Positions 17,552 to 43,113 of a stretch of DNA of 64,000 nucleotides are shown in pieces. Under the pieces are notes generated by a model. That model saw only the letters and a program-made list of their open reading frames with translations, did no database searches and was not told where the DNA came from. Numbering within the stretch: position 1 is the stretch's first letter; each line of letters begins with the position of its first letter. This DNA is from Paraphysomonas bandaiensis (lineage: Eukaryota; Protista; Chrysophyceae), in NCBI GenBank assembly GCA_965644295.1, contig CBFFRP010000296.1, forward strand, positions 62,001 through 126,000, read 5' to 3'. The position numbers and the translations under genes were made by a program.

Positions 17552-20500
17552 CTACTTTGAATTCTTACTTGTTTTTTTCGTCCCAGCAGACTTCTTTGCA
17601 CTGTTTGTCTTTGAAGTAACCGACTTTCTTGGACGACGACGTTTCTTTTTCGTAGGTTTTGGGGTACGTCGAGGGCGACGTCTCTTCTTTCTCGAAGGTT
17701 TCGGTGTTGGCTCAGGGGTGATTGCTGTGGGCGCAAATGTAGGAACAGATGAAGGTAAAGACGTAGGTACCCTCGTAGGACCCTCCAAAAATGGGATAGT
17801 TGGCCGTGGAGTAGGAACTGGCGTCGGCAAAGAAGTAGGCACAGAGGTTGGAATCGATGTAGGTGTGGATGTAGGAGTGGAAGTTGGAATGGATGTCGGA
17901 ACTGAAGTTGGAATAGATGTAGGGGTGGATGTCGGAATAGAAGTTGGCAACGAGGTTGGAATAGATGTCGGTAGAGATGTTGGACTGGATGTAGGCGTTG
18001 ACGTGGGAATGGAAGTTGGCATAGAGGTAGGAAACGATGTCGGTAGAGATGTAGGACTGGATGTCGGAATAGAGGTTGGAATAGATGTAGGATTGTTTGT
18101 TGGAACTGAAGTTGGAATAGACGTCGGAACAGACGTAGGATTGGAGGTTGGAATAGATGTAGGAGTGGAGGTTGGAATAGAAGTTGGTATAGAAGTTGGA
18201 ATTGATGTCGGTAGAGATGTTGGATTGGAGGTGGGGAATGAGGTTGGAATAGATGTCGGAATAGAGGTTGGATTAGATGTCGGAATAGATGTCGGAGTGG
18301 AGGTAGGGGTGGATGTAGGAATAGATGTAGGATTGGAGGTTGGAATAGATGTCGGTAGAGATGTAGGATTGGATGTCGGAATTGAAGTTGGAATAGATGT
18401 AGGAGTGGAGGTTGGAATAGAAGTTGGTATAGATGTAGGATTGGATGTCGGAATAGAAGTGGGCATAGAGGTTGGCATAGAGGTTGGAATAGATGTCGGT
18501 AGAGATGTAGGATTGGAGGTGGGAATAGATGTAGGATTGGAGGTGGGAAATGAAGTTGGAATAGATGTGGGGGTGGAAGTTGGATTAGTTGTCGGAATAG
18601 AAGTGGGCATAGAGGTTGGCATAGATGTAGGATTGGAGGTGGGAAATGAAGTTGGAATGGAGGTGGGAATAGAGGTTGGAATAGATGTTGGTAGAGATGT
18701 AGGATTGTTTGTTGGAACTGAAGTTGGAATAGATGTCGGTAGAGATGTAGGATTGGAGGTGGGAAATGATGTTGGAATAGATGTAGGATTGGAGGTGGGA
18801 ATAGATGTAGGAATAGAGGTGGGAATAGAAGTTGGAATAGATGTAGGGTTGGAGGTGGGGAATGATGTTGGAATAGATGTAGGATTGGACGTCGGAATAG
18901 AGGTTGGAATGGAGGTGGGAATAGATGTTGGAATAGATGTAGGATTGGAGGTGGGGAATGATGTTGGAATAGATGTAGGATTGGAGGTGGGAAATGATGT
19001 TGGAATAGATGTAGGAATGGAGGTGGGAATAGAGGTTGGAATAGATGTAGGGTTGGAGGTGGGAAATGATGTTGGAATGGAGGTGGGAATAGAAGTTGGA
19101 ATAGATGTAGGATTGGAGGTGGGAAATGATGTTGGAATAGATGTAGGAATAGAAGTTGGAATAGATGTTGGATTGGAGGTGGGAAATGATGTTGGAATGG
19201 AGGTGGGAATAGAAGTTGGAATAGATGTAGGATTGGAGGTGGGAATAGAAGTTGGAATAGATGTAGGATTGGAGGTGGGGAATGATGTTGGAATAGATGT
19301 TGGAATGGAGGTGGGAATAGAGGTTGGAATAGATGTTGGAATGGAGGTGGGAATAGAAGTTGGAATAGATGTAGGATTGGAGGTGGGAAATGATGTTGGA
19401 ATAGATGTAGGAATAGAAGTTGGAATAGATGTAGGATTGGAGGTGGGAAATGATGTTGGAATGGAGGTGGGAATAGAAGTTGGAATAGATGTAGGATTGG
19501 AGGTGGGAAATGATGTTGGAATGGAGGTAGGAATAGAAGTTGGAATAGATGTAGGATTGGAGGTGGGAAATGATGTTGGAATGGACGTCGGAATAGAGGT
19601 TGGAATAGATGTAGGATTGGAGGTGGGAAATGATGTTGGAATGGAGGTAGGAATAGAAGTTGGAATAGATGTAGGATTGGAGGTGGGAAATGATGTTGGA
19701 ATGGAGGTGGGAATAGAGGTTGGAATAGATGTAGGATTGGAGGTGGGAAATGATGTTGGAATGGAGGTGGGAATAGAGGTTGGAATAGATGTTGGAATGG
19801 AGGTGGGAATAGAAGTTGGAATAGATGTTGGAATGGAGGTGGGAATAGAAGTTGGAATAGATGTAGGAATAGAAGTTGGAATAGATGTAGGATTGGAGGT
19901 GGGAAATGATGTTGGAATGGAGGTAGGAATAGAAGTTGGAATAGATGTTGGATTGGAGGTGGGAGATGAAGTTGGAATGGACGTAGGAACCGATGTCGGA
20001 AGAGATGTGGGAAGTGATGTCGGTACACGAGTCGGGTTGGACGTAGGAACCGATGTCGGTACACGAGTCGGGCTAGAGGTAGGAACGGATGTAGGTACTG
20101 ACGTCGGAAGAGCAGTAGGGTGAGAAGTTGGTACCGCTGTCGGAATTGATGTCGGCACAGAAGTAGGTGTGGAGGTGGGTACTCGTGTTGGTCCCTCAAG
20201 GAATGGAATGGTTGGACGAGGAGTAGGGACTGGAGTAGGTTCTGGGGTTGGTCGCCGCCTCCTCCTCTTCTTTCTTGTAGGCTTGGGTGTTGGCTGTCTC
20301 TTCTTTCGGAACCTTGTTGGCCTAGGGGTACGATTTCTGCGCTTCTTTCTAGTGGGCTTCGGAGTGGGGCGGCGCTTGCGTCTTCTTCTGGTTGGTTTCG
20401 CTGTGGGTTCAGGTGTGCTCGATGATGTTGGAGCCGCAGTAGGTGTGGAGGTTGGTACTGATGTCGGAACTGGTGTGGGCACAGATGTAGGTACTGATGT

Positions 20501-20905
20501 CGGTAGAGATGTGGGAAGTGATGTAGGTACTGACGTCGGAAGAGCAGTAGGGTGAGAAGTTGGTACCGCTGTCGGAATTGATGTCGGCACCGAAGTAGGT
20601 GTGGAGGTGGGTACTCGTGTTGGTCCCTCAAGGAATGGAATGGTTGGACGAGGAGTGGGGACTGGAGTAGGTTCTGGGGTTGGTCGCCGCCTCCTCCTCT
20701 TCTTTCTTGTAGGTTTCAATGTTGGGCGTGTTCGTCTACGGCCTAGACTCCTGTGGCTGTATATGGGAGACTCATAACTTGAGAGGGAAAAGTCGTCTGG
20801 AGATGAGAGACCTCGTGACTGCACATCAACACGTGGGTAATCATCTTTAGCCAGTGTCACGTGAGGGGTTATCCAGAGCAAGATTAGTAGCTGAGATGCG
20901 ATCAT
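17552..20905 (-). CDS. Secreted mucin-like (PTSx)n protein A with poly-Arg/Lys blocks
   Basis: Intronless ORF. The likely start MIASQLLILLWITPHVTLA is a signal peptide similar to gene B's, followed by RGL/RSL motifs, KPTRKKRRRRRP blocks, well over 150 PTS[I/F/N/L/V/T/M] tetrapeptides and a basic C-terminus. Confidence 0.9.
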   Translation of the reverse strand: MIASQLLILLWITPHVTLAKDDYPRVDVQSRGLSSPDDFSLSSYESPIYSHRSLGRRRTRPTLKPTRKKRRRRRPTPEPTPVPTPRPTIPFLEGPTRVPTSTPTSVPTSIPTAVPTSHPTALPTSVPTSLPTSLPTSVPTSVPTPVPTSVPTSTPTAAPTSSSTPEPTAKPTRRRRKRRPTPKPTRKKRRNRTPRPTRFRKKRQPTPKPTRKKRRRRRPTPEPTPVPTPRPTIPFLEGPTRVPTSTPTSVPTSIPTAVPTSHPTALPTSVPTSVPTSSPTRVPTSVPTSNPTRVPTSLPTSLPTSVPTSIPTSSPTSNPTSIPTSIPTSIPTSFPTSNPTSIPTSIPTSIPTSIPTSIPTSIPTSIPTSIPTSIPTSIPTSIPTSFPTSNPTSIPTSIPTSIPTSFPTSNPTSIPTSIPTSIPTSFPTSNPTSIPTSIPTSIPTSFPTSNPTSIPTSIPTSIPTSFPTSNPTSIPTSIPTSIPTSFPTSNPTSIPTSIPTSIPTSFPTSNPTSIPTSIPTSIPTSIPTSIPTSIPTSIPTSFPTSNPTSIPTSIPTSNPTSIPTSIPTSIPTSFPTSNPTSIPTSIPTSIPTSFPTSNPTSIPTSIPTSIPTSFPTSNPTSIPTSIPTSIPTSIPTSFPTSNPTSIPTSFPTSNPTSIPTSIPTSIPTSIPTSNPTSIPTSFPTSNPTSIPTSIPTSIPTSIPTSNPTSIPTSFPTSNPTSLPTSIPTSVPTNNPTSLPTSIPTSIPTSIPTSFPTSNPTSMPTSMPTSIPTTNPTSTPTSIPTSFPTSNPTSIPTSNPTSLPTSIPTSMPTSMPTSIPTSNPTSIPTSIPTSTPTSIPTSIPTSNPTSLPTSIPTSNPTSIPTSTPTSTPTSIPTSNPTSIPTSIPTSFPTSNPTSLPTSIPTSIPTSIPTSTPTSIPTSNPTSVPTSIPTSVPTNNPTSIPTSIPTSSPTSLPTSFPTSMPTSIPTSTPTSSPTSLPTSIPTSLPTSIPTSTPTSIPTSVPTSIPTSTPTSTPTSIPTSVPTSLPTPVPTPRPTIPFLEGPTRVPTSLPSSVPTFAPTAITPEPTPKPSRKKRRRPRRTPKPTKKKRRRPRKSVTSKTNSAKKSAGTKKTSKNSK
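18560..19990. repeat. 12-bp coding microrepeat with a 60-bp higher-order period (PTSF-PTSN-PTSI-PTSI-PTSI)
   Basis: Sequence lines 19381-19740 are nearly identical at a 60-nt offset. Confidence 0.9.
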
Positions 20906-21826
20906 ACAGGAGTGGATCATGCCGCACAAAAGAATTATGACACCAGACTGCACCCTCCATTTCAATGAAATAAGTCAATAAACGAAATATTGGTGTATGT
21001 TGATAACTCAATCTGTTTCTCTGTATTTCGATTACAACTCTAGCCTGACACTCAACTGAGAAGATACGCACTTCGATGATCTTTGTTCTGTATTTACATG
21101 ACTTGGCATTCCAGTGACTAAAATTAGTGGCATTCCGTATTCAGTTTTCTACAGAATTGTGTACCATGCAAAAATATTTTGTGTGGTTTTGGTACATACA
21201 GGTTTAATGGTGCTCACAAATGCAGGGTTTTCAAAAAAGTATGAAAATCTAATTGTATATTGGTGGTATACCATGCTGTATTCCTACAGTATGTGGTGTT
21301 CGCTGTTCACCAGATGGACATACAGCAGTAGGAATTCCTAGGCAGTACAGCGTGTCGGCAGTCTGCATCATATTTTTCGGGATTAAATTGAAGCAAAACT
21401 CCTCTATATAACTTCAATACAACTACGGCTGAAATACACATAATTATTGTCTCAATATTAGAGGCATCTTGGAACAAAAATATACAAAGGATGCCGATAC
21501 GAGCATCTAGATATGATGCTCGCATTGCTAGAGAGCGATATGAGCAGCCTTATATCATAGATGCCATTGTACAGTTAGTTAAGTACAACAGTGTTATGTA
21601 TCTCATCTTCAACGAATGATGCACAGTATCGCGCACCGCGACTCGTTGCACCCTCTCGGTACGAAGCAAGAGTGTACGTGAGTATGTTAATGTATTAGCT
21701 GACATTCGATTACCGCGTAATTCAATATGAGTCCATTGGCTTACGGCACAAAGAGAGCACGTGGAATGATGTTATTCATATTTTCCTTGTGCTCATTGTT
21801 GTTGCATTGTTTACTACAAGAACAAC

Positions 21827-23971
21827 ATGCGCGCAGTCATCATTGCAGTGTTGCTCTGGATATCTCCGCACGCCGTTAAAGGCGAGGCAGATAATCCACA
21901 ATCTGATATGATATCCTCTGATACATCTCACACTGGTGGCTATGTATATCATCTAACACATGACAGTCAGAATGTACCACTGAATAGGGAACCTGAATGG
22001 GGAAGGTCTAATGATGAGCGCATATTGTGGTATCGCCGACGGAGACGACCAACACCCAAGCCTACAAGAAAGAAGAGGAGGAGGCGGCGACCAACCCCAG
22101 AACCTACTCCAGTCCCCACTCCTCGTCCAACCATTCCATTCCTTGAAGGACCAACACGAGTGCCCACCTCCACACCTACTTCGGTGCCGACATCAATTCC
22201 GACAGCGGTACCAACTTCTCACCCTACTGCTCTTCCGACGTCAGTACCTACATCACTTCCCACATCTCTACCGACATCAGTACCTACATCTGTGCCCACA
22301 CCAGTTCCGACATCAGTACCAACCTCCACACCTACTGCGGCTCCAACATCATCGAGCACACCTGAACCCACAGCGAAACCAACCAGAAGAAGACGCAAGC
22401 GCCGCCCCACTCCGAAGCCCACTAGAAAGAAGCGCAGAAATCGTACCCCTAGGCCAACAAGGTTCCGAAAGAAGAGACAGCCAACACCCAAGCCTACAAG
22501 AAAGAAGAGGAGGAGGCGGCGACCAACCCCAGAACCTACTCCAGTCCCTACTCCTCGTCCAACCATTCCATTCCTTGAGGGACCAACACGAGTGCCCACC
22601 TCCACACCTACTTCGGTGCCGACTTCAATTCCGACAGCGGTACCAACTTCTCACCCTACTGCTCTTCCGACGTCAGTACCTACATCTGTTCCTACCTCTA
22701 GCCCGACTCGTGTACCGACATCACTTCCCACATCTCTTCCGACATCGGTTCCTACGTCCAACCCGACTCGTGTACCGACATCACTTCCCACATCTCTTCC
22801 GACATCGGTTCCTACGTCCATTCCAACTTCATCTCCCACCTCCAATCCAACATCTCTGCCGACATCGGTTCCTACGTCTAACCCGACTCGTGTACCGACA
22901 TCACTTCCCACATCGGTTCCTACGTCCAACCCGACATCACTGCCGACATCGGTTCCTACGTCCAACCCGACTCGTGTACCGACATCACTTCCCACATCTT
23001 TTCCGACATCGGTTCCTACGTCTAACCCGACTCGTGTACCGACATCACTTCCCACATCGGTTCCTACGTCCAACCCGACTCGTGTACCGACATCACTTCC
23101 CACATCTCTTCCGACATCGGTTCCTACGTCCAACCCGACATCACTGCCGACATCACTTCCCACATCTCTTCCGACATCGGTTCCGACGTCCAACCCGACT
23201 CGTGTACCGACATCACTTCCCACATCTCTTCCGACATCGGTTCCTACGTCTAACCCGACTCGTGTACCGACGTCACTTCCCACATCTCTTCCGACATCTG
23301 TTCCTACGTCCAACCCGACTCGTGTACCGACATCACTTCCCACATCACTTCCGACATCGGTTCCTACGTCTAACCCGACTCGTGTACCGACATCACTTCC
23401 CACATCTCTTCCGACATCTGTTCCTACGTCTAACCCGACTCGTGTACCGACATCACTTCCCACATCTCTTCCGACATCGGTTCCGACATCTGAATCTTCT
23501 CCGGCACCATCACCTAAGCCAACTCGACGTCGGAAAAAGAGACGGCCAACACCCAAGCCTACAAGAAAGAAGAGGAGGAGGCGGCGACCAACCCCAGAAC
23601 CTACTCCAGTCCCCACTCCTCGTCCAACCATTCCATTCCTTGAAGGACCAACACGAGTGCCCACCTCCACACCTACTTCGGTGCCGACATCAATTCCGAC
23701 AGCGGTACCAACTTCTCACCCTACTGCTCTTCCGACGTCAGTACCTACATCACTTCCCACATCTCTACCGACATCAGTACCTACATCTGTGCCCACACCA
23801 GTTCCGACATCAGTACCAACCTCCACACCTACTGCGGCTCCAACATCATCGAACACACCTGAACCCACAGCGAAACCAACCAGAAGAAGACGCAAGCGCC
23901 GCCCCACTCCGAAGCCCACTAGAAAGAAGCGCCGCCGCCGCCGACGGCCTTCTCCAGTCCCGTCGCCTTGA
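21827..23971 (+). CDS. Secreted mucin-like (PTSx)n protein B with poly-Arg/Lys blocks; paralog of A
   Basis: Signal peptide MRAVIIAVLLWISPHAVKG, then ERIL followed by RRRRRP. It has three copies of the KPTRKKRRRRRPTPEPTPVPTPRPTIPFLEGPT module and a central PTSN-PTRV-PTSL-PTSL-PTSV array. Confidence 0.92.
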   Translation: MRAVIIAVLLWISPHAVKGEADNPQSDMISSDTSHTGGYVYHLTHDSQNVPLNREPEWGRSNDERILWYRRRRRPTPKPTRKKRRRRRPTPEPTPVPTPRPTIPFLEGPTRVPTSTPTSVPTSIPTAVPTSHPTALPTSVPTSLPTSLPTSVPTSVPTPVPTSVPTSTPTAAPTSSSTPEPTAKPTRRRRKRRPTPKPTRKKRRNRTPRPTRFRKKRQPTPKPTRKKRRRRRPTPEPTPVPTPRPTIPFLEGPTRVPTSTPTSVPTSIPTAVPTSHPTALPTSVPTSVPTSSPTRVPTSLPTSLPTSVPTSNPTRVPTSLPTSLPTSVPTSIPTSSPTSNPTSLPTSVPTSNPTRVPTSLPTSVPTSNPTSLPTSVPTSNPTRVPTSLPTSFPTSVPTSNPTRVPTSLPTSVPTSNPTRVPTSLPTSLPTSVPTSNPTSLPTSLPTSLPTSVPTSNPTRVPTSLPTSLPTSVPTSNPTRVPTSLPTSLPTSVPTSNPTRVPTSLPTSLPTSVPTSNPTRVPTSLPTSLPTSVPTSNPTRVPTSLPTSLPTSVPTSESSPAPSPKPTRRRKKRRPTPKPTRKKRRRRRPTPEPTPVPTPRPTIPFLEGPTRVPTSTPTSVPTSIPTAVPTSHPTALPTSVPTSLPTSLPTSVPTSVPTPVPTSVPTSTPTAAPTSSNTPEPTAKPTRRRRKRRPTPKPTRKKRRRRRRPSPVPSP

Positions 23972-27205: not shown

Positions 27206-29587
27206 CTAATATCGAAACGCTCGCTGTGTACTGGGTGAACCACTGACCACTTCAGCGGTGTCTTGTCCATGTGGATGTCTGGGAGAATATTGATTGACCT
27301 GACTGTAGCTTCGTGGGTTAGGTGGTGGGTTTTCATTTCCATGCTCTGGAGCTGATGACCGCTGAGTATAGGAAACAGGGCCTCTCTGCTGCATATATTT
27401 GGCGGTCTTAGAGGTCTTTGGACGACGATTTGAAGACTGCACAGGCAACTGTTGAGGAATCACCGATGAACCTGATGATTGAATGCTATGGGTACTCTCA
27501 CGACTGGGCCCCGCAGAACTATTCGTTCGACCAGACATATAGGCAGTAGGAACATGCCCATGATTGGACCTGTCCGATGGCCGCAGTGGATGGCGACTAT
27601 TGGCATCCATAGTGTCTACACTGCTAGAACTCACATCTAAACCGTTCGGCTTGTCAACATTGAAGAGAGAAGATAGCTGAATCTTTCCATCCAGTCCACC
27701 GTTATCCACATACCAGCGACCGAGCTTCATTGAAGCGTAACCGGCAGCGATAAGCACAGCAGTAATGATAATAAAAGCCGATATCCACATTCCTGCTATG
27801 GCTCCTGTTTCAGACATGTCCACTTTCGAGGACGACGGTTTCACAATCTGCACAGCGTCGAATATATACGCCGCACCAGTGCCTATGTTCATTCCACCTT
27901 TGAATCCAGTAAGAAACCCCCCAATCAATGCAGTGTCACCATAGAGAGACACACTCGACCCGAAATAATCACCATTTCCACCGAATCGATCATAAATATT
28001 GGTCTCCTTGACCCACTCCTTCATATACAATGGACCCTTGTAGACCGGTGAATCGCTATTAACTTTTCCGGTCGAATTAAATACAAGGAGCTCGGCCCGA
28101 CCTCTAGAGGTAGGAGGAGGAAATGTACCCACCAGCACATGCTTGTCTGAAACCGCCGTAGTGTATCCAAACATTTCATTCGAATTGCTACCATACTTCT
28201 TTGACATAAGCATCCAGTAATTGCCATCTTTGTCTATCGTATATTCATACGACCGAATGCGCCAAACATTGTGCCTATGCTCCTCCGGACCGCCCTGTAG
28301 AGACCTGCGCTCGGAGTTAATTCTACTTCGAGGCATACTTTTCTCTCGAGGAGGGAGATTAATACCCTTGGATTTTGCAATCTGCTCAGTAGACATATCT
28401 TCAAGCTTCACGTCTCCATTATGGTGTTCATGTTCTTCTGGATGGTCGTCGGGGTGACTAGGTGTCCACGTGGACCACACATCTCCGTACGGAAGAAGCG
28501 ACATGATCAAAACTGCCCCAGGCGTTGCGCCATAATCATTGTCAAAAGGCGAACCGGCGACCACAGTGAGGGTGGTTTCGTTGATAACAGAAACACTGGA
28601 GCCGAATTTGTCGCCAGCGTAGTACTGTAGATCATTTTGCACATGTAGAATTTCAACATACTCCCAGGAAGTGTAAGTATGGGGAGGTTCACCCTGAAGA
28701 CTCCTCTGTTGCTCCTCACCATCGGCATCTACTTTCAGTTTTCTATGATGCTCGCAGCCACTGGGCATATCTTCTGGGGGGCCTTCATGCGGACATTCTT
28801 TTTCTACGGGCTCAAGATGGAACAGAAAGACCGACTCCTGACCAGGAGCACCGACAGCCACCGCATTTCCATAACCCGCAACAGACCACCCAAAGTACCC
28901 ATTTTGATAGGGCTCAGAAGGTTGCATTACAACCGTTTCATACCAGGAACTTCCAGAACTCGTAAAAATAAAAACTGACCCGGATCCCTCCATATGGTCA
29001 TCATGGTTATGCCCATATGCCCCAACGACGATGGCATGGGCATACTTTCCGTGTCCATGAACAATAGCGACGCTAAAACCAAAGAAATCTCCAGCTCGAG
29101 GATTACTTGGTACAAGTTCCTCGGAATACTTCAAGAACTCATCACCGACGGAGTAAAATACATAAGCCTTTCCGCTGTTGTAGCCATACGAGTCGTCTTT
29201 TGGAGCCCCGATAACTGCGGCACCCTGAGACAGGCTTAGACTCTCACCAAAACCATCTTCATCCTGGTACGAAGCTAATATTAATCCAGTATCTACCCAC
29301 TTCCTATCATCCGTTTGCTTGAACACAAAGACAAGCCCATCATCATCAGCAGACCCAGAGGTAGTAACTGCTCTCTTCTTCGCACTTACAATACACGTAC
29401 TACCCCATATAGACACTGCACGACCAAACTGATCCCCGCTAACTAAATCAACAGTTTCAACTTCAAGAGGAAGAGGTACAGTAGAGTTGCTTAAACCGAC
29501 ATACACTTCAGTTGATTTCGATCCATAAACATGAGTCACCACACCCAACACAACGGCTCCGTAGAGCAATACAAATAATGCCTGCAT
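27206..29587 (-). CDS. FG-GAP repeat (integrin-alpha-like propeller) type I membrane protein
   Basis: Signal peptide; repeats GDQFGRAVS, DGFGESLS..IGAP, GDFFGFSVA..VGAY, GYFGWSVA..VGAP, GDKFGSSVS..AGSP, EMFGYTTA and GDYFGSSVS; TM helix GMWISAFIIITAVLIAAGY; S/P/Q-rich cytoplasmic tail. Intronless. Confidence 0.92.
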   Translation of the reverse strand: MQALFVLLYGAVVLGVVTHVYGSKSTEVYVGLSNSTVPLPLEVETVDLVSGDQFGRAVSIWGSTCIVSAKKRAVTTSGSADDDGLVFVFKQTDDRKWVDTGLILASYQDEDGFGESLSLSQGAAVIGAPKDDSYGYNSGKAYVFYSVGDEFLKYSEELVPSNPRAGDFFGFSVAIVHGHGKYAHAIVVGAYGHNHDDHMEGSGSVFIFTSSGSSWYETVVMQPSEPYQNGYFGWSVAGYGNAVAVGAPGQESVFLFHLEPVEKECPHEGPPEDMPSGCEHHRKLKVDADGEEQQRSLQGEPPHTYTSWEYVEILHVQNDLQYYAGDKFGSSVSVINETTLTVVAGSPFDNDYGATPGAVLIMSLLPYGDVWSTWTPSHPDDHPEEHEHHNGDVKLEDMSTEQIAKSKGINLPPREKSMPRSRINSERRSLQGGPEEHRHNVWRIRSYEYTIDKDGNYWMLMSKKYGSNSNEMFGYTTAVSDKHVLVGTFPPPTSRGRAELLVFNSTGKVNSDSPVYKGPLYMKEWVKETNIYDRFGGNGDYFGSSVSLYGDTALIGGFLTGFKGGMNIGTGAAYIFDAVQIVKPSSSKVDMSETGAIAGMWISAFIIITAVLIAAGYASMKLGRWYVDNGGLDGKIQLSSLFNVDKPNGLDVSSSSVDTMDANSRHPLRPSDRSNHGHVPTAYMSGRTNSSAGPSRESTHSIQSSGSSVIPQQLPVQSSNRRPKTSKTAKYMQQRGPVSYTQRSSAPEHGNENPPPNPRSYSQVNQYSPRHPHGQDTAEVVSGSPSTQRAFRY

Positions 29588-39183: not shown

Positions 39184-40578
39184 TTAAACCAAAGGTGAGC
39201 ACTGCGGGCACCCACCCTGCAGAACTTCGAAGGCTGCCATGCTCTCTGTTAGAGGAATTCCAGTATTTTCTAAACAATTCGTCACATCACAGCATACAGT
39301 TTGGTTTGCTGGATAGCTAACATTCTTTTCCACATCCCAAAACAAATCCGCTGGAGAAGATGCGAAATATTGAAGAGTGCTGAGAGCTTGGGCTCCGAAG
39401 TAATATGCATCAGAGAGTGAAGTATAAAAGGAATTCATGACAAAACAGTGATTTTCATCCATTGAAATGGAATTATTAACAGCAAAATTTAGCATATCCT
39501 CACACTGGTACTGCCATAGGATAGATTCATTATCGCCCAGTTCTATGGCATTCTCCTCATAGCCATACATTAGGATTTTGGCAACGTCATAAGAATTATG
39601 GTTGTTTAAGTCCCCTTCTGCGGTCAGCCAGCCATACGGGTATCTGTTGTCTCGCATATTCCTTACAGTATATAAAGTGCGATCTAAATATGGGGTGTGG
39701 CCTCTATTGTACGAGACCGTGTGAAATGTCATGCTCAAGTCGGATCCGCAAACTATTTCTTCCGTAAAGCAACTGAGAGGCTGCACCGACGGACTTTCAA
39801 AAACTATAGCAGTACGGTTAACAAATCTTTCTCCCCACATACCTGTTTTCGTGTCCTGAGCTACACTTTCTTCACCAATAAAATAATCAGAATAATAGGA
39901 CGCAAATTCATCGGTAATATTAAAACCGATTTCTTGTGAGTACTTAGAGATATATTCTCGGTAATAGCTCTTGAACACAAGCTGGTGCCATGTACCAGTT
40001 TGTCCACCAAGCTCCTCGCGATTGTTCACAGGAGGTAAGGCTTCGTTCAAAATGTCAGTAGTGAGTATAGAGTTCCAATAATCTCGCATTCGGTACCAAG
40101 ATTGTGATATGTTGTAGACGAATCGGAGTGGATACTTGGGCGGTTTATCAGCTTCCATCAGTTGCCCCAAAGGTCCTATCATATAACCAACTTTATTGAA
40201 CCAGAAATCATAACATGGACCCCAACTGCCATCAGTCTGTTGATCGCGTGCCCATGATTGATTCTTATCACTGAGGGAACTCTCTAAGTCAGCCAATCGG
40301 CGATATGCGTAATCAAAAGAGCATGTGTAGTTGATGAGGTACTTGGCGTCCTCGTAAATCTGTTGGCTGCACTCCATACCATTGTTATCAACCTGCAATG
40401 ATACAAGTTCATCATGCAGCTTGTTACTTCGTTCATAGAGCCGGTCTCGTTGATATATATAGTCACTGCCGCAGCGCACTGTGAACTGTCTGTCCATCAT
40501 CCCGTATATGTCCTCTGCAGCACTGTAACAGCACACGCTAATGAAGAGGACAGCTAATTGCAAATAAGAAAAGCACAT
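39184..40578 (-). CDS. Secreted protein of unknown function, 464 aa, with a QxxDGSWG (alpha/alpha-toroid-type) motif
   Basis: Signal peptide MCFSYLQLAVLFISVCCYSAA; intronless. Motifs include QQTDGSWGPCY, QDTKTGMWG, DLSMTFHTVSY, YPYGW and NNHNSYDV, plus many N-glycosylation sequons. Confidence 0.85.
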   Translation of the reverse strand: MCFSYLQLAVLFISVCCYSAAEDIYGMMDRQFTVRCGSDYIYQRDRLYERSNKLHDELVSLQVDNNGMECSQQIYEDAKYLINYTCSFDYAYRRLADLESSLSDKNQSWARDQQTDGSWGPCYDFWFNKVGYMIGPLGQLMEADKPPKYPLRFVYNISQSWYRMRDYWNSILTTDILNEALPPVNNREELGGQTGTWHQLVFKSYYREYISKYSQEIGFNITDEFASYYSDYFIGEESVAQDTKTGMWGERFVNRTAIVFESPSVQPLSCFTEEIVCGSDLSMTFHTVSYNRGHTPYLDRTLYTVRNMRDNRYPYGWLTAEGDLNNHNSYDVAKILMYGYEENAIELGDNESILWQYQCEDMLNFAVNNSISMDENHCFVMNSFYTSLSDAYYFGAQALSTLQYFASSPADLFWDVEKNVSYPANQTVCCDVTNCLENTGIPLTESMAAFEVLQGGCPQCSPLV

Positions 40579-40980
40579 GGCACTTATGCCTTATAGGAGG
40601 GAATGAACTGAACTGATGAAGAACAACAAGAAGAGATCCGCCCACTGCCTGCCTGCCTCGTCCTGGCTGCACAAGAAGAAACAAGCACAGGCCTCAGTCG
40701 TAGGAGTGGGCGCGATACAGAACACAGAAATGCAGCATTTCTTGGATTCCTGCAATAAAAATACCACATTTCTAGATTTACATGGTACGAAGATATACAG
40801 CAGTATACATTCAAAAAGATACGCATTCTAATTGCTGATTGGTTAATTTCATTTTGGTGCAGTGTCTCTTCAAGATATCTCTCGCCTTTTCAAGATTTCA
40901 TAGTTACGGTGGCAGTTGCAACGCTTTGCAACATCTTTTGTAATCAACTAGACACCAAAATCACAAACATCGAAGTGACC

Positions 40981-43113
40981 ATGATGAAAACTGCGTTAAT
41001 TACAGCATTGGCTGCCAATGCCGCCAGCATTGTTAATGCCGAGTGTGCAAATGCATGCAATGGGCACGGAAGTTGCACCAGTTATGATATGTGCGATTGC
41101 AACAGGAACTGGCAGGCTAATGACTGTTCAGAGCGTGTTTGCCAGTATGGTCTGGCACACGTTGATACCCCAAAGGGAGATTTGAACCACGATAATGTCA
41201 TTGAAGGCCCTGACAATATCATTGTTGAGAATGCCTTTAAGTATCCTTTTGGAACCACTGAGCAGTTTCCCCGCATGCAGGATTCGGATCTTGCTGACCT
41301 CGAGAATTCAGCCCACTACTACATGGAATGCTCTAATAAGGGAACCTGTAACAGAGAAACTGGTACTTGTGAGTGCTTTCCTGGATATGATGGTGCAGCA
41401 TGTCAGCGTGCTTCTTGCCCTGGATACCCAGAGTCCTGCTCTGGGCATGGTGTTTGCAAAACCATTCGCCAGTTGGCCAATGCCGATTACGGCAATATTT
41501 ACGAGCTTTGGGACAGAGATGTAACAATGGGGTGTGAGTGTGACAAGGGATTTTATGGTCCTGACTGCTCTTTGAGAGAGTGCAAGTATGAGATCGACCC
41601 TCTTTACTATGATGATACCGCTACTATTAAATATTCTGTCTTCGACTTCGCCATCCTCACCACTGGAAGTCTGCAGACAGATTTCACCAATGGTATGTCT
41701 GATTCTAGCACAGCTTACTGGGCGATCAAGTTCTATGATATGCACGGTGAGGACTGGACTACTAGACCTATTCCTGAGGGAGCTCAGTGCGCCGAGGTCT
41801 TGGATGCCCTGGCTGACCTTCCCAATGATGTTATCCCTCGAATGGATTCCACGTGGTGCACGAGAACTGCCAGGGACAATGCTGAGAGTCTTGATGGTGG
41901 TTTCGATAGCACTGATGCACTTACCTATGATACTGCTCGTCCTATTGCATACCCTCTTGGATTCTGGCTTGCCGATGGTGTCACACGCAACACAACCTCA
42001 TTTGATAACGTAGAGGCTCCTGAGTTCTCTGGTTACATTTACCGCATTCACTTCAACAACAACCCAGGAAAACTTAGACAACCTGAGATCGATATCTACC
42101 TTGATGGTAAGCGCCCCACTCTCAGCTCAGATCCCGAAAACACTGACGAGATCGTCACACGTGTGTGGACCGACGGGCAGCAGGGTGAGAACATTGATTA
42201 CTTCGGCGACCACTGCGATGGTGTCACTGTTACACTGGACTTTACTGATGGAACTGGAACTGTCCTCGCTGGTCTTGATGCTACTGAGACCGCACTTCTT
42301 AAGGCATGTCTCGGAACCTCTGATTTTGATCCCAATAACAATGTTGAGATCTACGACTGGGACCATGGTAGCGAGATGTATCCCCATCTTATCAAGCTTG
42401 TCCTTTCAGTGACCAGCTCAGCTGATGGAGGGTACTACGCTGCATTATACTACGACGGAACTAACTTTAACCTCCTTAATCCCATCCGCGGTCCTGATCA
42501 GGACGAGAGTGACATGTTCGAGGTGTACACGACTAAGGGTGTGCTCGCTCGTACGTCCAACAAGACCGAGGCACACTTTGGATTCGCTTCTCAGGAAATT
42601 GTCATGACTAACACAACCTGGGAGTACCATGAGGGTAGGGTATCTTTCGATGGTGATGTTTCTTGCGAGGTCAATGATAACAACCGTTACAAGCTTGAGT
42701 ACATTGACCACTGCTTGAACAAGTCTGATATCATTACCTTCCTTACTTTTGACGACCTCTCCCGCAACCCTCCTCACATTAACCTTTACACTGTTGAGAA
42801 GATCTGGACAAAGCAATACCAGGCCAACTCTACAGATACCTTCCCCACTCTTGCCAAGGACGTCCATCAACGATTTGGTACTCACGTCATCGAGACAGAC
42901 CTTTCCACCAACTGGGCTGCTGATAATGCCATCGAACCAAACAACCCTCTTAACTTTAACATCTACAAGTTCTTCCCTGACGAGACAAGCAACTATGAGT
43001 ACGTCGCTCAGTGCTCCAATAGAGGAATCTGCAACACTGACGAGGGGTTGTGTGAGTGCTTCTCTGGCTACACTGGTGATGCATGCCAGACTCAAGCCAG
43101 CCTTGCTGTGTAA
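40981..43113 (+). CDS. Tubular mastigoneme protein, Sig1/Ocm1 family (EGF-like Cys-rich)
   Basis: Signal peptide; ECANACNGHGSC..CQYGLAHVDTPKGDLN..YPFGTTEQFP..AHYYMECSNKGTCNRETGTCECFPGYDGAACQRASCP..CSGHGVC; C-terminal CSNRGICNTDEGLCECFSGYTGDAC. This is the four Cys-rich EGF-like block layout of stramenopile flagellar hair proteins. Confidence 0.93.
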   Translation: MMKTALITALAANAASIVNAECANACNGHGSCTSYDMCDCNRNWQANDCSERVCQYGLAHVDTPKGDLNHDNVIEGPDNIIVENAFKYPFGTTEQFPRMQDSDLADLENSAHYYMECSNKGTCNRETGTCECFPGYDGAACQRASCPGYPESCSGHGVCKTIRQLANADYGNIYELWDRDVTMGCECDKGFYGPDCSLRECKYEIDPLYYDDTATIKYSVFDFAILTTGSLQTDFTNGMSDSSTAYWAIKFYDMHGEDWTTRPIPEGAQCAEVLDALADLPNDVIPRMDSTWCTRTARDNAESLDGGFDSTDALTYDTARPIAYPLGFWLADGVTRNTTSFDNVEAPEFSGYIYRIHFNNNPGKLRQPEIDIYLDGKRPTLSSDPENTDEIVTRVWTDGQQGENIDYFGDHCDGVTVTLDFTDGTGTVLAGLDATETALLKACLGTSDFDPNNNVEIYDWDHGSEMYPHLIKLVLSVTSSADGGYYAALYYDGTNFNLLNPIRGPDQDESDMFEVYTTKGVLARTSNKTEAHFGFASQEIVMTNTTWEYHEGRVSFDGDVSCEVNDNNRYKLEYIDHCLNKSDIITFLTFDDLSRNPPHINLYTVEKIWTKQYQANSTDTFPTLAKDVHQRFGTHVIETDLSTNWAADNAIEPNNPLNFNIYKFFPDETSNYEYVAQCSNRGICNTDEGLCECFSGYTGDACQTQASLAV

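What the first reader, a model, noticed from the sequence alone, without database searches (positions are those of the whole stretch)
17552..23971. Divergent pair of secreted polycationic PTSx proteins with RxL sites: candidate silica/matrix-templating system
Seen: both genes encode a signal peptide, a short acidic/Ser-rich pro-region ending in RxL (RGL and RSL in A; ERIL in B), then alternating poly-Arg/Lys blocks (KPTRKKRRRRRP), an invariant PTIPFLEGPT motif and long PTSx rods. Neither has a globular domain, Cys in the mature part, or a TM anchor. Knowledge: diatom silaffin and cingulin precursors are low-complexity, cationic, heavily modified and processed at RxL (RRIL in Sil1p), and R-x-K/R-R clusters are kexin/furin-type sites. 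Inference: these are block-copolymer (glycosylated rod + polycation) proteins for biomineral scales or cysts, lorica or adhesive matrix. This is the best candidate for an undescribed system here, but the function is unproven.
Basis: partly seen in the sequence, partly recalled or inferred. Interest (0 to 1): 0.8.

Follow-up and report, generated by a model that had tools for sequence, protein, structure and literature searches.

The report
Secreted sugar-thread proteins with polycationic joints
Two back-to-back genes of a silica-scaled marine flagellate (Paraphysomonas) encode secreted, anchor-less threads of proline-threonine-serine four-residue repeats, broken by strongly positive blocks and a strictly conserved 14-residue motif; they are good but untested candidates for the matrix that holds or shapes the silica scales.

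Summary
Gene A (17552-20920, -) and gene B (21827-23971, +) each encode:
- a signal peptide;
- an acidic pro-region ending in RxL;
- Arg/Lys blocks;
- three copies of PTPRPTIPFLEGPT;
- rods of 200 (A) and 76 (B) in-register P-T/S-x-x units.
Neither has a Cys, a TM segment or a folded domain.

Selection acts on the protein. Third codon positions in the rods are scrambled while first and second positions are fixed. The 14-residue motif is identical in 9 copies despite 9-10 synonymous changes.

The host is Paraphysomonas, a silica-scaled chrysophyte with at least 8 silicon-transporter loci. Four further paralogues carry the same module.

No relative was found outside this genome, and no transcript either. 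No kexin-type P-domain was detected.

The rods fit the published TLP-4 "glycofibril" core. This scan reached that reading earlier on other DNA of this genome (s1-443538).

Best reading: secreted glycofibril matrix proteins whose polycationic joints bind polyanions such as scale silica or acidic glycans. Silaffin-like silica templating is possible but unproven.

Verdict: a new variant of a known kind, of moderate interest.

The parts
17552..20920 (-). Gene A coding sequence (1122 aa from the ATG at 20920; stop at 17552-17554)
20849..20920 (-). A: signal peptide MIHSCMIASQLLILLWITPHVTLA
   Evidence: the only hydrophobic window
20741..20848 (-). A: acidic 36-aa pro-region ending RSL-G (RGL further upstream)
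20684..20752 (-). A: first polybasic block (RSLGRRRTRPTLKPTRKKRRRRR)
20618..20647 (-). A: motif copy 1, PTIPFLEGPT (core of PTPRPTIPFLEGPT)
20252..20398 (-). A: second and third polybasic blocks (30 K/R in 49 aa)
20186..20215 (-). A: motif copy 2
17804..20185 (-). A: long rod, about 200 in-register P-T-S-x tetrapeptides (about 250 nm at 1.24 nm per unit)
   Evidence: unit rise taken from PMC11725842
17774..17803 (-). A: motif copy 3. It differs from copy 1 at 8 nucleotides, all synonymous
17624..17701 (-). A: C-terminal polybasic block (KPSRKKRRRPRRTPKPTKKKRRRPRK)
17555..17623 (-). A: Lys/Ser/Thr-rich tail (two 14-aa windows with at least 5 Lys)
20921..21826 (.). Intergenic region of 906 bp shared by the divergent pair; putative bidirectional promoter, not analysed
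21827..23971 (+). Gene B coding sequence (714 aa)
21827..21883 (+). B: signal peptide MRAVIIAVLLWISPHAVKG
21884..22033 (+). B: acidic 50-aa pro-region ending RIL-WY
22034..22090 (+). B: first polybasic block
22127..22156 (+). B: motif copy 1
22376..22522 (+). B: second and third polybasic blocks
22559..22588 (+). B: motif copy 2
22583..23494 (+). B: long rod, 76 in-register P[TS]xx units (about 94 nm)
23516..23587 (+). B: fourth polybasic block
23624..23653 (+). B: motif copy 3
23873..23947 (+). B: C-terminal polybasic block

Best explanation
A and B belong to a six-gene, apparently Paraphysomonas-specific family of secreted, unanchored matrix proteins.

Shown by the sequence. Each protein has a signal peptide, an acidic pro-region ending in RxL, and a mature chain that keeps a four-residue register almost throughout. 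Long (Pro-Thr-Ser-x)n rods alternate with short joints. Each joint is an Arg/Lys block (14-30 positive charges) followed by PTPE-PTPV-PTPR-PTIP-FLEG, in which FLEG replaces one PTSx unit.

Inferred. The rods are cores of TLP-4-type glycofibrils. In that model Pro is hydroxylated to (di)hydroxyproline, and it and the neighbouring Thr carry large O-glycans. This would give stiff sugar-coated threads of about 20, 95 and 250 nm. The sugar-free polycationic joints would act as electrostatic attachment or cross-linking points for polyanions. The most plausible partners are the negatively charged silica of the scales and acidic glycans of neighbouring fibrils. The proteins would then build or hold the organic layer in which the scale case sits. 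The pro-region would be removed at RxL, unmasking the first cationic block after exit from the ER. The conserved PTPRPTIPFLEGPT would be a specific recognition site, for a modifying enzyme or a partner, that marks where each rod starts.
For: Anatomy and secretion features.

Protein-level selection: rod codon positions 1 and 2 have entropy about 0.06 bit against 1.7 bit at position 3. The 14-residue motif is identical in 9 copies across three genes, with 9-10 of 42 nucleotides changed, all synonymous.

Family: four further paralogues carry a polybasic block plus RP[TP]xP[FILVA]L[DE] (C263, C363, C433, C219). Three of the four have a signal peptide, an RxL pro-region and K/S/T-rich regions.

Rod precedent: the TLP-4 glycofibril is a linear chain of PT/Sxx tetrapeptides with diHyp carrying two glycans and Ser/Thr carrying one. 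Its rise is 12.4 A per unit. Such repeats are enriched in Ochrophyta, and adhesion or tethering has been proposed (PMC11725842). PTS-rich proteins are components of diatom adhesive and surface material containing 17% dihydroxyproline (bioRxiv 10.1101/2023.03.06.531300).

Host machinery: at least 20 P4H-type 2OG-oxygenase loci.

Host biology: Paraphysomonas, a silica-scaled chrysophyte, with at least 8 SIT loci.

Polycations and silica: poly-L-arginine and poly-L-lysine precipitate silica (PMC4557024).
Against: No transcript or transcript-derived ORF fragment of A, B, C263 or C363 was found in public assemblies. A neighbouring gene and a silicon transporter of the same organism were found. Repeat-induced assembly failure, or records being withheld, could explain this.

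Glycosylation, hydroxylation, cleavage and localisation are all untested.

The partner of the cationic joints is a guess.

With no relatives in other silica-scaled chrysophytes, there is no phylogenetic link to silicification.

The signal peptides were judged by eye and by hydropathy only.
Confidence: 0.5

Rival explanations
1. Silaffin- or cingulin-like silica templating inside the silica deposition vesicle. After RxL removal of the pro-region, the polycationic blocks and K/S tails would nucleate and pattern silica, and the proteins would end up embedded in the scales.
For: - SP plus an RXL domain is typical of diatom biosilica proteins (PMC5525289; PMC4557024).
- The RxL boundary is conserved in the family.
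- Polyarginine precipitates silica.
- Lys-dominated clusters with pentalysine-like density occur in A, C263, C363 and C433 (definitions from PMC9650480).
- The host silicifies.
Against: - The blocks are Arg-rich, whereas silaffin chemistry depends on modified Lys. B has no Lys cluster.
- A 250-nm sugar-coated rod is an odd occupant of a thin SDV lumen.
- There is no sequence relation to any diatom silica protein, because all searches hit only PT repeats.
- No expression data link the genes to the Si supply.
Confidence: 0.2
2. Polyprotein precursors. The polybasic runs are processing sites where a secretory protease cuts A and B into separate glycosylated PTSx rods. Each rod would begin with ...PTPRPTIPFLEGPT. 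Short cationic peptides might also be released.
For: - Many R-x-K/R-R motifs lie between rod units, in a regular 'basic block, motif, rod' order.
- Diatom silaffins are produced in this way from Sil1p repeats.
- Many S8 subtilases are present in the genome.
Against: - No kexin/furin P-domain was detected in the genome.
- The basic blocks are far longer (up to 30 K/R) than a cleavage site needs, and their Pro/Thr spacing is conserved.
- A's third motif has no basic block before it.
Confidence: 0.1
3. General mucilage unrelated to silica, such as adhesive or stalk material, prey-capture coat, or terminal filaments of flagellar hairs. The cationic joints would bind bacterial surfaces or substrata.
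For: - PTS-rich giant proteins are diatom adhesives.
- Adhesion or tethering has been proposed for TLP-4.
- The host is a phagotroph with about 90 giant mucin-stalk receptors according to earlier notes of this scan (unchecked).
- The C219 paralogue has an EGF-like Cys-rich head.
Against: - Nothing excludes this reading, and it overlaps with the best explanation except in the partner.
- RxL pro-domains and K/S clusters are so far described mainly for silica-associated proteins.
Confidence: 0.13
4. Not a functional gene pair: untranscribed, recently duplicated repeat ORFs or an assembly artefact.
For: - No transcript evidence was found in any public collection searched.
- The 5' parts form an inverted repeat.
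Against: - There is strong purifying selection at the amino-acid level in the rods and the motif.
- The frames are intact over 1122 and 714 codons.
- The signal peptide and RxL layout are conserved across six loci on five contigs.
- The arms are 88-98% identical rather than 100%, and the pro-regions are unique.
Confidence: 0.05

Closest known systems
TLP-4 glycofibril core and TLP-4-like tetrapeptide-repeat proteins of Ochrophyta (Wang et al., PNAS 2025, PMC11725842)
   Same: - A linear, domain-free chain of P-T/S-x-x tetrapeptides in strict register (200 and 76 units here).
- Pro followed by Thr, which is the diHyp plus Ser/Thr glycosylation pair of the model.
- A stramenopile host.
- Predicted lengths of hundreds of nm.
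   Different: - The gene behind TLP-4 itself is unknown.
- No polybasic joints, RxL pro-region or PTPRPTIPFLEGPT-type punctuation are described for it.
- Glycosylation is untested here.
Diatom PTS-rich adhesive and surface glycoproteins (CaTrailin4, Ca5609, CaFAP1; bioRxiv 10.1101/2023.03.06.531300)
   Same: - Secreted and very PTS-rich.
- Modular, with non-PTS repeats interspacing the rods.
- Expected heavy O-glycosylation.
   Different: - Their interspersed modules are Cys-rich folded domains (DUF1/2, CAA, vWA).
- Here the spacers are Cys-free polycations plus a 14-residue linear motif.
- No sequence relation exists beyond composition.
Diatom silaffins and cingulins (Sil1p, tpSil3, CinY/CinW)
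   Same: - Signal peptide, then a pro-region ending in RXL.
- Low complexity, cationic clusters and Ser/Thr richness.
- The host deposits silica in SDVs.
   Different: - The blocks here are Arg-dominated rather than Lys-dominated.
- There is no KXXK-rich body in A or B.
- Rods of PTSx are not a silaffin or cingulin feature.
- No homology exists, and the host is a chrysophyte, in which no silica matrix protein is known.
Pfam PF04886 PT repeat, and mucin or HRGP-type linkers
   Same: Strong match to the PT repeat model (A 190 bits, B 91 bits).
   Different: PF04886 only describes composition. Extensin-type SPPP(P) motifs are absent.

Membership tests
TLP-4-like glycofibril core proteins | Long tandem array of P-[ST]-x-x tetrapeptides in register (the paper searched with 50 repeats) | tested here: met
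   A has 200 consecutive units and B has 76. Register and codon pattern are shown.
TLP-4-like glycofibril core proteins | Entry into the secretory pathway | tested here: met
   N-terminal hydrophobic h-region with small residues at -3/-1, and no other hydrophobic segment. No SignalP run was possible.
TLP-4-like glycofibril core proteins | 3,4-dihydroxyproline carrying two glycans, plus a glycan on the next Ser/Thr; an 8-nm fibril with 12.4 A rise | not testable with these tools
   Needs chemistry or cryo-EM. The genome does encode at least 20 P4H-type 2OG oxygenase domains.
Pfam PF04886 (PT repeat) | Score above the gathering threshold (26.2 bits) | tested here: met
   A 190.4 bits, B 91 bits.
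Silaffin/cingulin-type biosilica proteins | ER signal peptide followed by a short domain ending in RXL | tested here: met
   RSL (A) and RIL (B) lie 1-2 residues before the first basic run. The same layout occurs in C263 and C433, and in C363 at the acidic/basic boundary. Definition from PMC5525289.
Silaffin/cingulin-type biosilica proteins | Lys-rich clusters (pentalysine cluster: 5 K in 12-14 aa; or clustered K(X)2K) | tested here: inconclusive
   A has two Lys-only windows in the last 20 residues and 3 KxxK motifs. B has none, because its basic residues are 76 R against 25 K. Paralogues C263, C363 and C433 have many.
Silaffin/cingulin-type biosilica proteins | Physical association with biosilica, or silica precipitation activity | not testable with these tools
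   Only the host's capacity is shown: Paraphysomonas with at least 8 SIT loci.
Kexin/furin proprotein-convertase substrates | R-x-K/R-R sites in the substrate | tested here: met
   7 runs (A) and 10 runs (B) of at least 4 K/R.
Kexin/furin proprotein-convertase substrates | A convertase with the P domain (PF01483) in the host | tested here: not met
   No match in the 62.5-Mb assembly. S8 catalytic domains are abundant. Absence from a draft assembly is not proof.
Extensin-type HRGPs | Ser-Pro(3-5) motifs | tested here: not met
   No SPPP is visible in either translation, where the repeats are P-T-S-x.

The most novel reading that the evidence does not exclude
These would be the first candidate silica-scale matrix or tether proteins of a chrysophyte. 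The design would be convergent with diatom silaffins and cingulins (signal peptide, RxL-removed pro-domain, polycation) but fused to TLP-4-type glycofibril rods. One molecule would both bind or nucleate silica at its cationic joints and space or tether scales with sugar-coated threads of defined length. PTPRPTIPFLEGPT would be a new linear recognition motif that starts each rod.
Probability: 0.22. Interest if true: 0.8.

Novelty: new variant of a known kind. Interest (0 to 1): 0.55.

Why it matters
No protein of the silica-scale machinery of chrysophytes is known. Diatom Sin1, for instance, is absent from Paraphysomonas (PMC5525289). The genes behind the glycofibrils seen by cryo-EM in natural waters are also unidentified.

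This family offers small, intron-free, well-delimited candidates for both questions, including the 363-aa C263 member. It also offers a strictly conserved 14-residue motif that can be used as an antibody or pull-down handle.

If the cationic joints bind silica, the proteins would show how a non-diatom silicifier couples mineral to an organic coat. If not, they remain a clean model of a 'punctuated' glycofibril.

Tried and rejected
1. Relatives outside the genome. All of the following found nothing real:
- Word-indexed searches with C263 and with the B N-terminus gave only PT-repeat linkers and no PFLEG motif. The search with C363 gave no hits at all.
- A profile of 12 modules against 1.84 billion representatives gave one spurious repeat protein, P0043.
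- A back-translated PTIPFLEG scan of JGI metagenome contigs gave 72 chance matches, none confirmed.

2. Transcript evidence. Exact-product look-ups for B, C263 and C363 found nothing. A 22-nt pattern shared by both signal-peptide regions found nothing in metagenome contigs; the pattern was verified on the window. The neighbouring FG-GAP gene is present in transcript contigs.

3. Kexin-type convertase: not found.

4. 'Neutral minisatellite with accidental ORFs': rejected on the codon-position pattern and on synonymous-only divergence of the motif.

5. 'Fold-back assembly artefact': rejected, because the arms are 88-98% identical and the pro-regions are unique.

6. Membership of the silaffin or cingulin families: not claimed, because the resemblance is compositional only.

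7. Not attempted. Structure prediction was skipped, since a single-sequence model of a disordered repeat would be uninformative. No SignalP tool was available. The species within Paraphysomonas was not determined.


Full report
**1. What is there**

The window is contig C296:62001-126000 of a 62.5-Mb, 669-contig eukaryotic assembly. Two long ORFs diverge from a 906-bp spacer.
- Gene A is listed as 17552-20965 (-) from a TTG. Its first ATG is at 20920.
- Gene B is 21827-23971 (+).

Both begin with a typical secretory leader. A has MIHSCMIASQLLILLWITPHVTLA and B has MRAVIIAVLLWISPHAVKG. These share the LLWI(T/S)PH core, and 22 nt of that coding DNA match one degenerate pattern. It is the only hydrophobic segment in either protein, so there is no TM span or GPI-like tail.

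Next comes an acidic pro-region of 36 aa (A) or 50 aa (B). It ends in RSL-G (A) and RIL-WY (B), directly before the first poly-Arg run.

The mature parts lack Cys and contain about 24% Pro, 21-23% Thr and 14-20% Ser. Pfam sees only the PT repeat PF04886.

**2. Architecture**

The chains keep a four-residue register almost throughout.
- A: basic block, PTPE-PTPV-PTPR-PTIP-FLEG, 17 P[TS]xx units, a double basic block (30 K/R in 49 aa), the motif again, 200 units, the motif again, 5 units, a basic block, then a 23-aa Lys/Ser/Thr tail.
- B: the same first half, then 76 units, basic block, motif, 17 units, basic block.

Net charge is +67 (A) and +83 (B). A's rod prefers PTSI/PTSF/PTSN. B's rod prefers PTSL/PTSV/PTSN/PTRV.

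The 5' 1 kb of the two genes is an inverted repeat of 88% identity, with sub-blocks at 98%. This points to a duplication with ongoing conversion.

**3. It is a protein, not a satellite**

Across 187 consecutive 12-nt units of A, the first and second positions of the Pro, Thr and Ser codons are almost invariant (about 0.06 bit). Third positions are close to random (1.6-1.9 bit). B behaves in the same way.

The core PTPRPTIPFLEGPT is identical in all nine copies in A, B and the paralogue on C263. Yet copies differ at 9-10 of 42 nucleotides, and every difference is synonymous. A's own third copy differs from its first at 8 synonymous sites. The motif is therefore under strict amino-acid constraint, as expected of a specific recognition site.

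The other long ORFs on the same DNA are frame shadows of the repeat.

**4. The family**

A profile of the module finds it on five contigs of this genome.
- C263 (363 aa): signal peptide, pro-region ending RNL-G, three modules, and five KPSNGKTKTSKKD repeats.
- C363 (452 aa): signal peptide, RDL, and repeated 'K/R block + TPRPT(T/I)PVLD' units with K/S/T-rich spacers.
- C433 (3043-aa open frame): signal peptide, RTL-HVLE, a (PPRKKR)n block, variants PSVPALEVPT and RPPVPLLEVPT, a giant PTSx rod and a K/S-rich tail.
- C219 (2062-aa open frame): EGF-like Cys-rich head, then RPTVPILDNPS modules and a rod.

The consensus is a polybasic block followed by R-P-[TP]-x-P-[FILVA]-L-[DE]-x-[PST]-[ST].

In A, B, C263 and C433 an RxL ends 1-4 residues before the first polybasic run. 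Shuffling each pro-region gives this by chance with p = 0.02-0.07 each, a product of about 2e-6. The paralogues are not independent, but the pro-regions do not align with one another.

PTSx rods without the module are common in the genome. Examples are two neighbouring giant genes on C577, plus C145 and C91. Earlier notes of this scan describe many mucin-stalk receptors and one 'glycofibril stalk' protein, s1-443538. I reached the glycofibril reading independently from the literature before seeing that note.

**5. Host**

A 525-aa silicon transporter of this genome is identical to an MMETSP1103 transcript labelled taxid 36769, which is Paraphysomonas. This is a colourless chrysophyte that bears silica scales. 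It is cited as a biosilica producer lacking Sin1 in PMC5525289.

The genome has at least 8 SIT loci with intact 500-560-aa frames and EGxQ/GRQ motifs. It has at least 20 P4H-type 2OG-oxygenase domains and many S8 subtilases. It has no detectable kexin/furin P domain.

**6. Relatives and expression**

Nothing outside this genome carries the module.
- Two word searches returned only PT-repeat linkers and the third (C363) returned nothing.
- A profile search of 1.84 billion representatives gave one spurious hit.
- A degenerate PTIPFLEG scan of JGI metagenome and metatranscriptome contigs confirmed nothing.

No transcript-derived ORF or contig for A, B, C263 or C363 turned up. By contrast, the neighbouring FG-GAP gene (27206-29587) and a silicon transporter are present in transcript assemblies of the same organism.

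Expression is therefore unproven. Repeats that break short-read assemblies, or records withheld by the tools, are alternative reasons for the blank.

**7. Interpretation**

The rods match the published core of the TLP-4 glycofibril. That fibril is a linear chain of PT/Sxx tetrapeptides. The Pro is 3,4-dihydroxyproline bearing two glycans, and the next Ser/Thr bears a third. The rise is 12.4 A per unit. Such repeats are enriched in Ochrophyta, and the proposed role is adhesion or tethering (PMC11725842; follow-ups). Diatom adhesive and surface proteins are likewise PTS-rich rods interrupted by other modules. On that scale the rods here would measure about 21, 94 and 248 nm.

What is new is the punctuation: sugar-free polycationic joints, a constrained 14-residue motif and an RxL pro-domain.
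- RXL pro-domains are typical of diatom biosilica proteins and are removed by an unknown protease.
- Polyarginine precipitates silica.
- Four of the five family members examined (A, C263, C363 and C433, but not B) have Lys clusters of pentalysine-like density.

I therefore favour secreted glycofibril matrix proteins whose cationic joints bind polyanions (confidence 0.5). Scale silica or acidic glycans are the likeliest partners.

The rivals are:
- silaffin-like templating inside the SDV (0.2);
- polyprotein processing at the basic runs (0.1);
- silica-unrelated mucilage (0.13);
- a silent locus (0.05).

The steps shown are the anatomy, the selection, the family and the host. All modifications, cleavage, localisation and partners are inferred.

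**8. Verdict**

The 'silica/matrix' interpretation is partly supported by the host's biology and the conserved RxL, but it remains untested. The kexin inference is weakened.

The locus is a new variant of a known kind (PTS-repeat glycofibril or mucin-like proteins). It is worth experimental follow-up because it gives tractable candidates in a silicifier with no known matrix proteins.

Noticed in passing
G000:C263:139429-140520 (L016:2430-3521:+): The most compact family member (363 aa). It has a signal peptide, a pro-region ending RNL, three PTPRPTIPFLEGPT modules and five KPSNGKTKTSKKD Lys-rich repeats. It is the best construct for experiments.
   Followed up: partly
G000:C363:210926-212284 (L024:1427-2785:+): A 452-aa secreted protein made of 3.5 repeats of 'K/R block + TPRPT(T/I)PVLD + short PT stretch + K/S/T-rich spacer'. 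It is a divergent module family member with almost no rod. It lies next to a long (TACA/TGTA)-type simple repeat at L024:557-1350.
   Followed up: partly
G000:C433 about 113000-124624 (L018, L023): A 3043-aa open frame. It has a signal peptide, RTL, a (PPRKKR)n block, two divergent modules (…VPALEVPT, …VPLLEVPT), a rod of more than 2300 aa of PTSx, and a K/S-rich basic tail.
   Followed up: partly
G000:C577 about 84000-97000 and about 140000-152000 (L019, L020); also C91 and C145: Two giant (4285- and 3836-aa frames) secreted PTSx-rod genes on one contig share a head, ASISVLSNSYAASGTYDEIKAQLDENQNTD…CSCSQ. The head resembles the C263 pro-region (SVSSNSYADQS). This suggests that the polycationic family and the plain giant rods share ancestry.
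   Followed up: no
G000:C219:1-6186 (L017, - strand): A 2062-aa frame combining EGF-like Cys-rich repeats, two RPTVPILDNPS modules and a PTSx/PSSx rod. The contig start cuts the gene.
   Followed up: no
G000:C137:28115-33220: Three identical-scoring S8 subtilase domains lie in one 2746-aa open frame, which looks like a tandem triple protease.
   Followed up: no
G000 contigs C348, C406, C398, C150, C405, C298 (two), C149: At least eight silicon-transporter (PF03842) loci, most with intact intron-free 500-560-aa frames made of two repeated halves.
   Followed up: partly
G000 contigs C188, C196, C551, C437, C68, C669: Besides two full-length eukaryotic SSU rRNA copies (C525, C653), there are several partial or lower-scoring SSU matches. 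They may be organellar, fragmented or contaminant rDNA.
   Followed up: no
window 27206-29587 (-), 39184-40578 (-), 40909-43113 (+): The neighbours are also secreted or surface proteins: an FG-GAP repeat protein that is transcribed (exact product in three transcript contigs), a 464-aa protein with a signal peptide, and a teneurin-like EGF protein. No link to A or B was established.
   Followed up: partly
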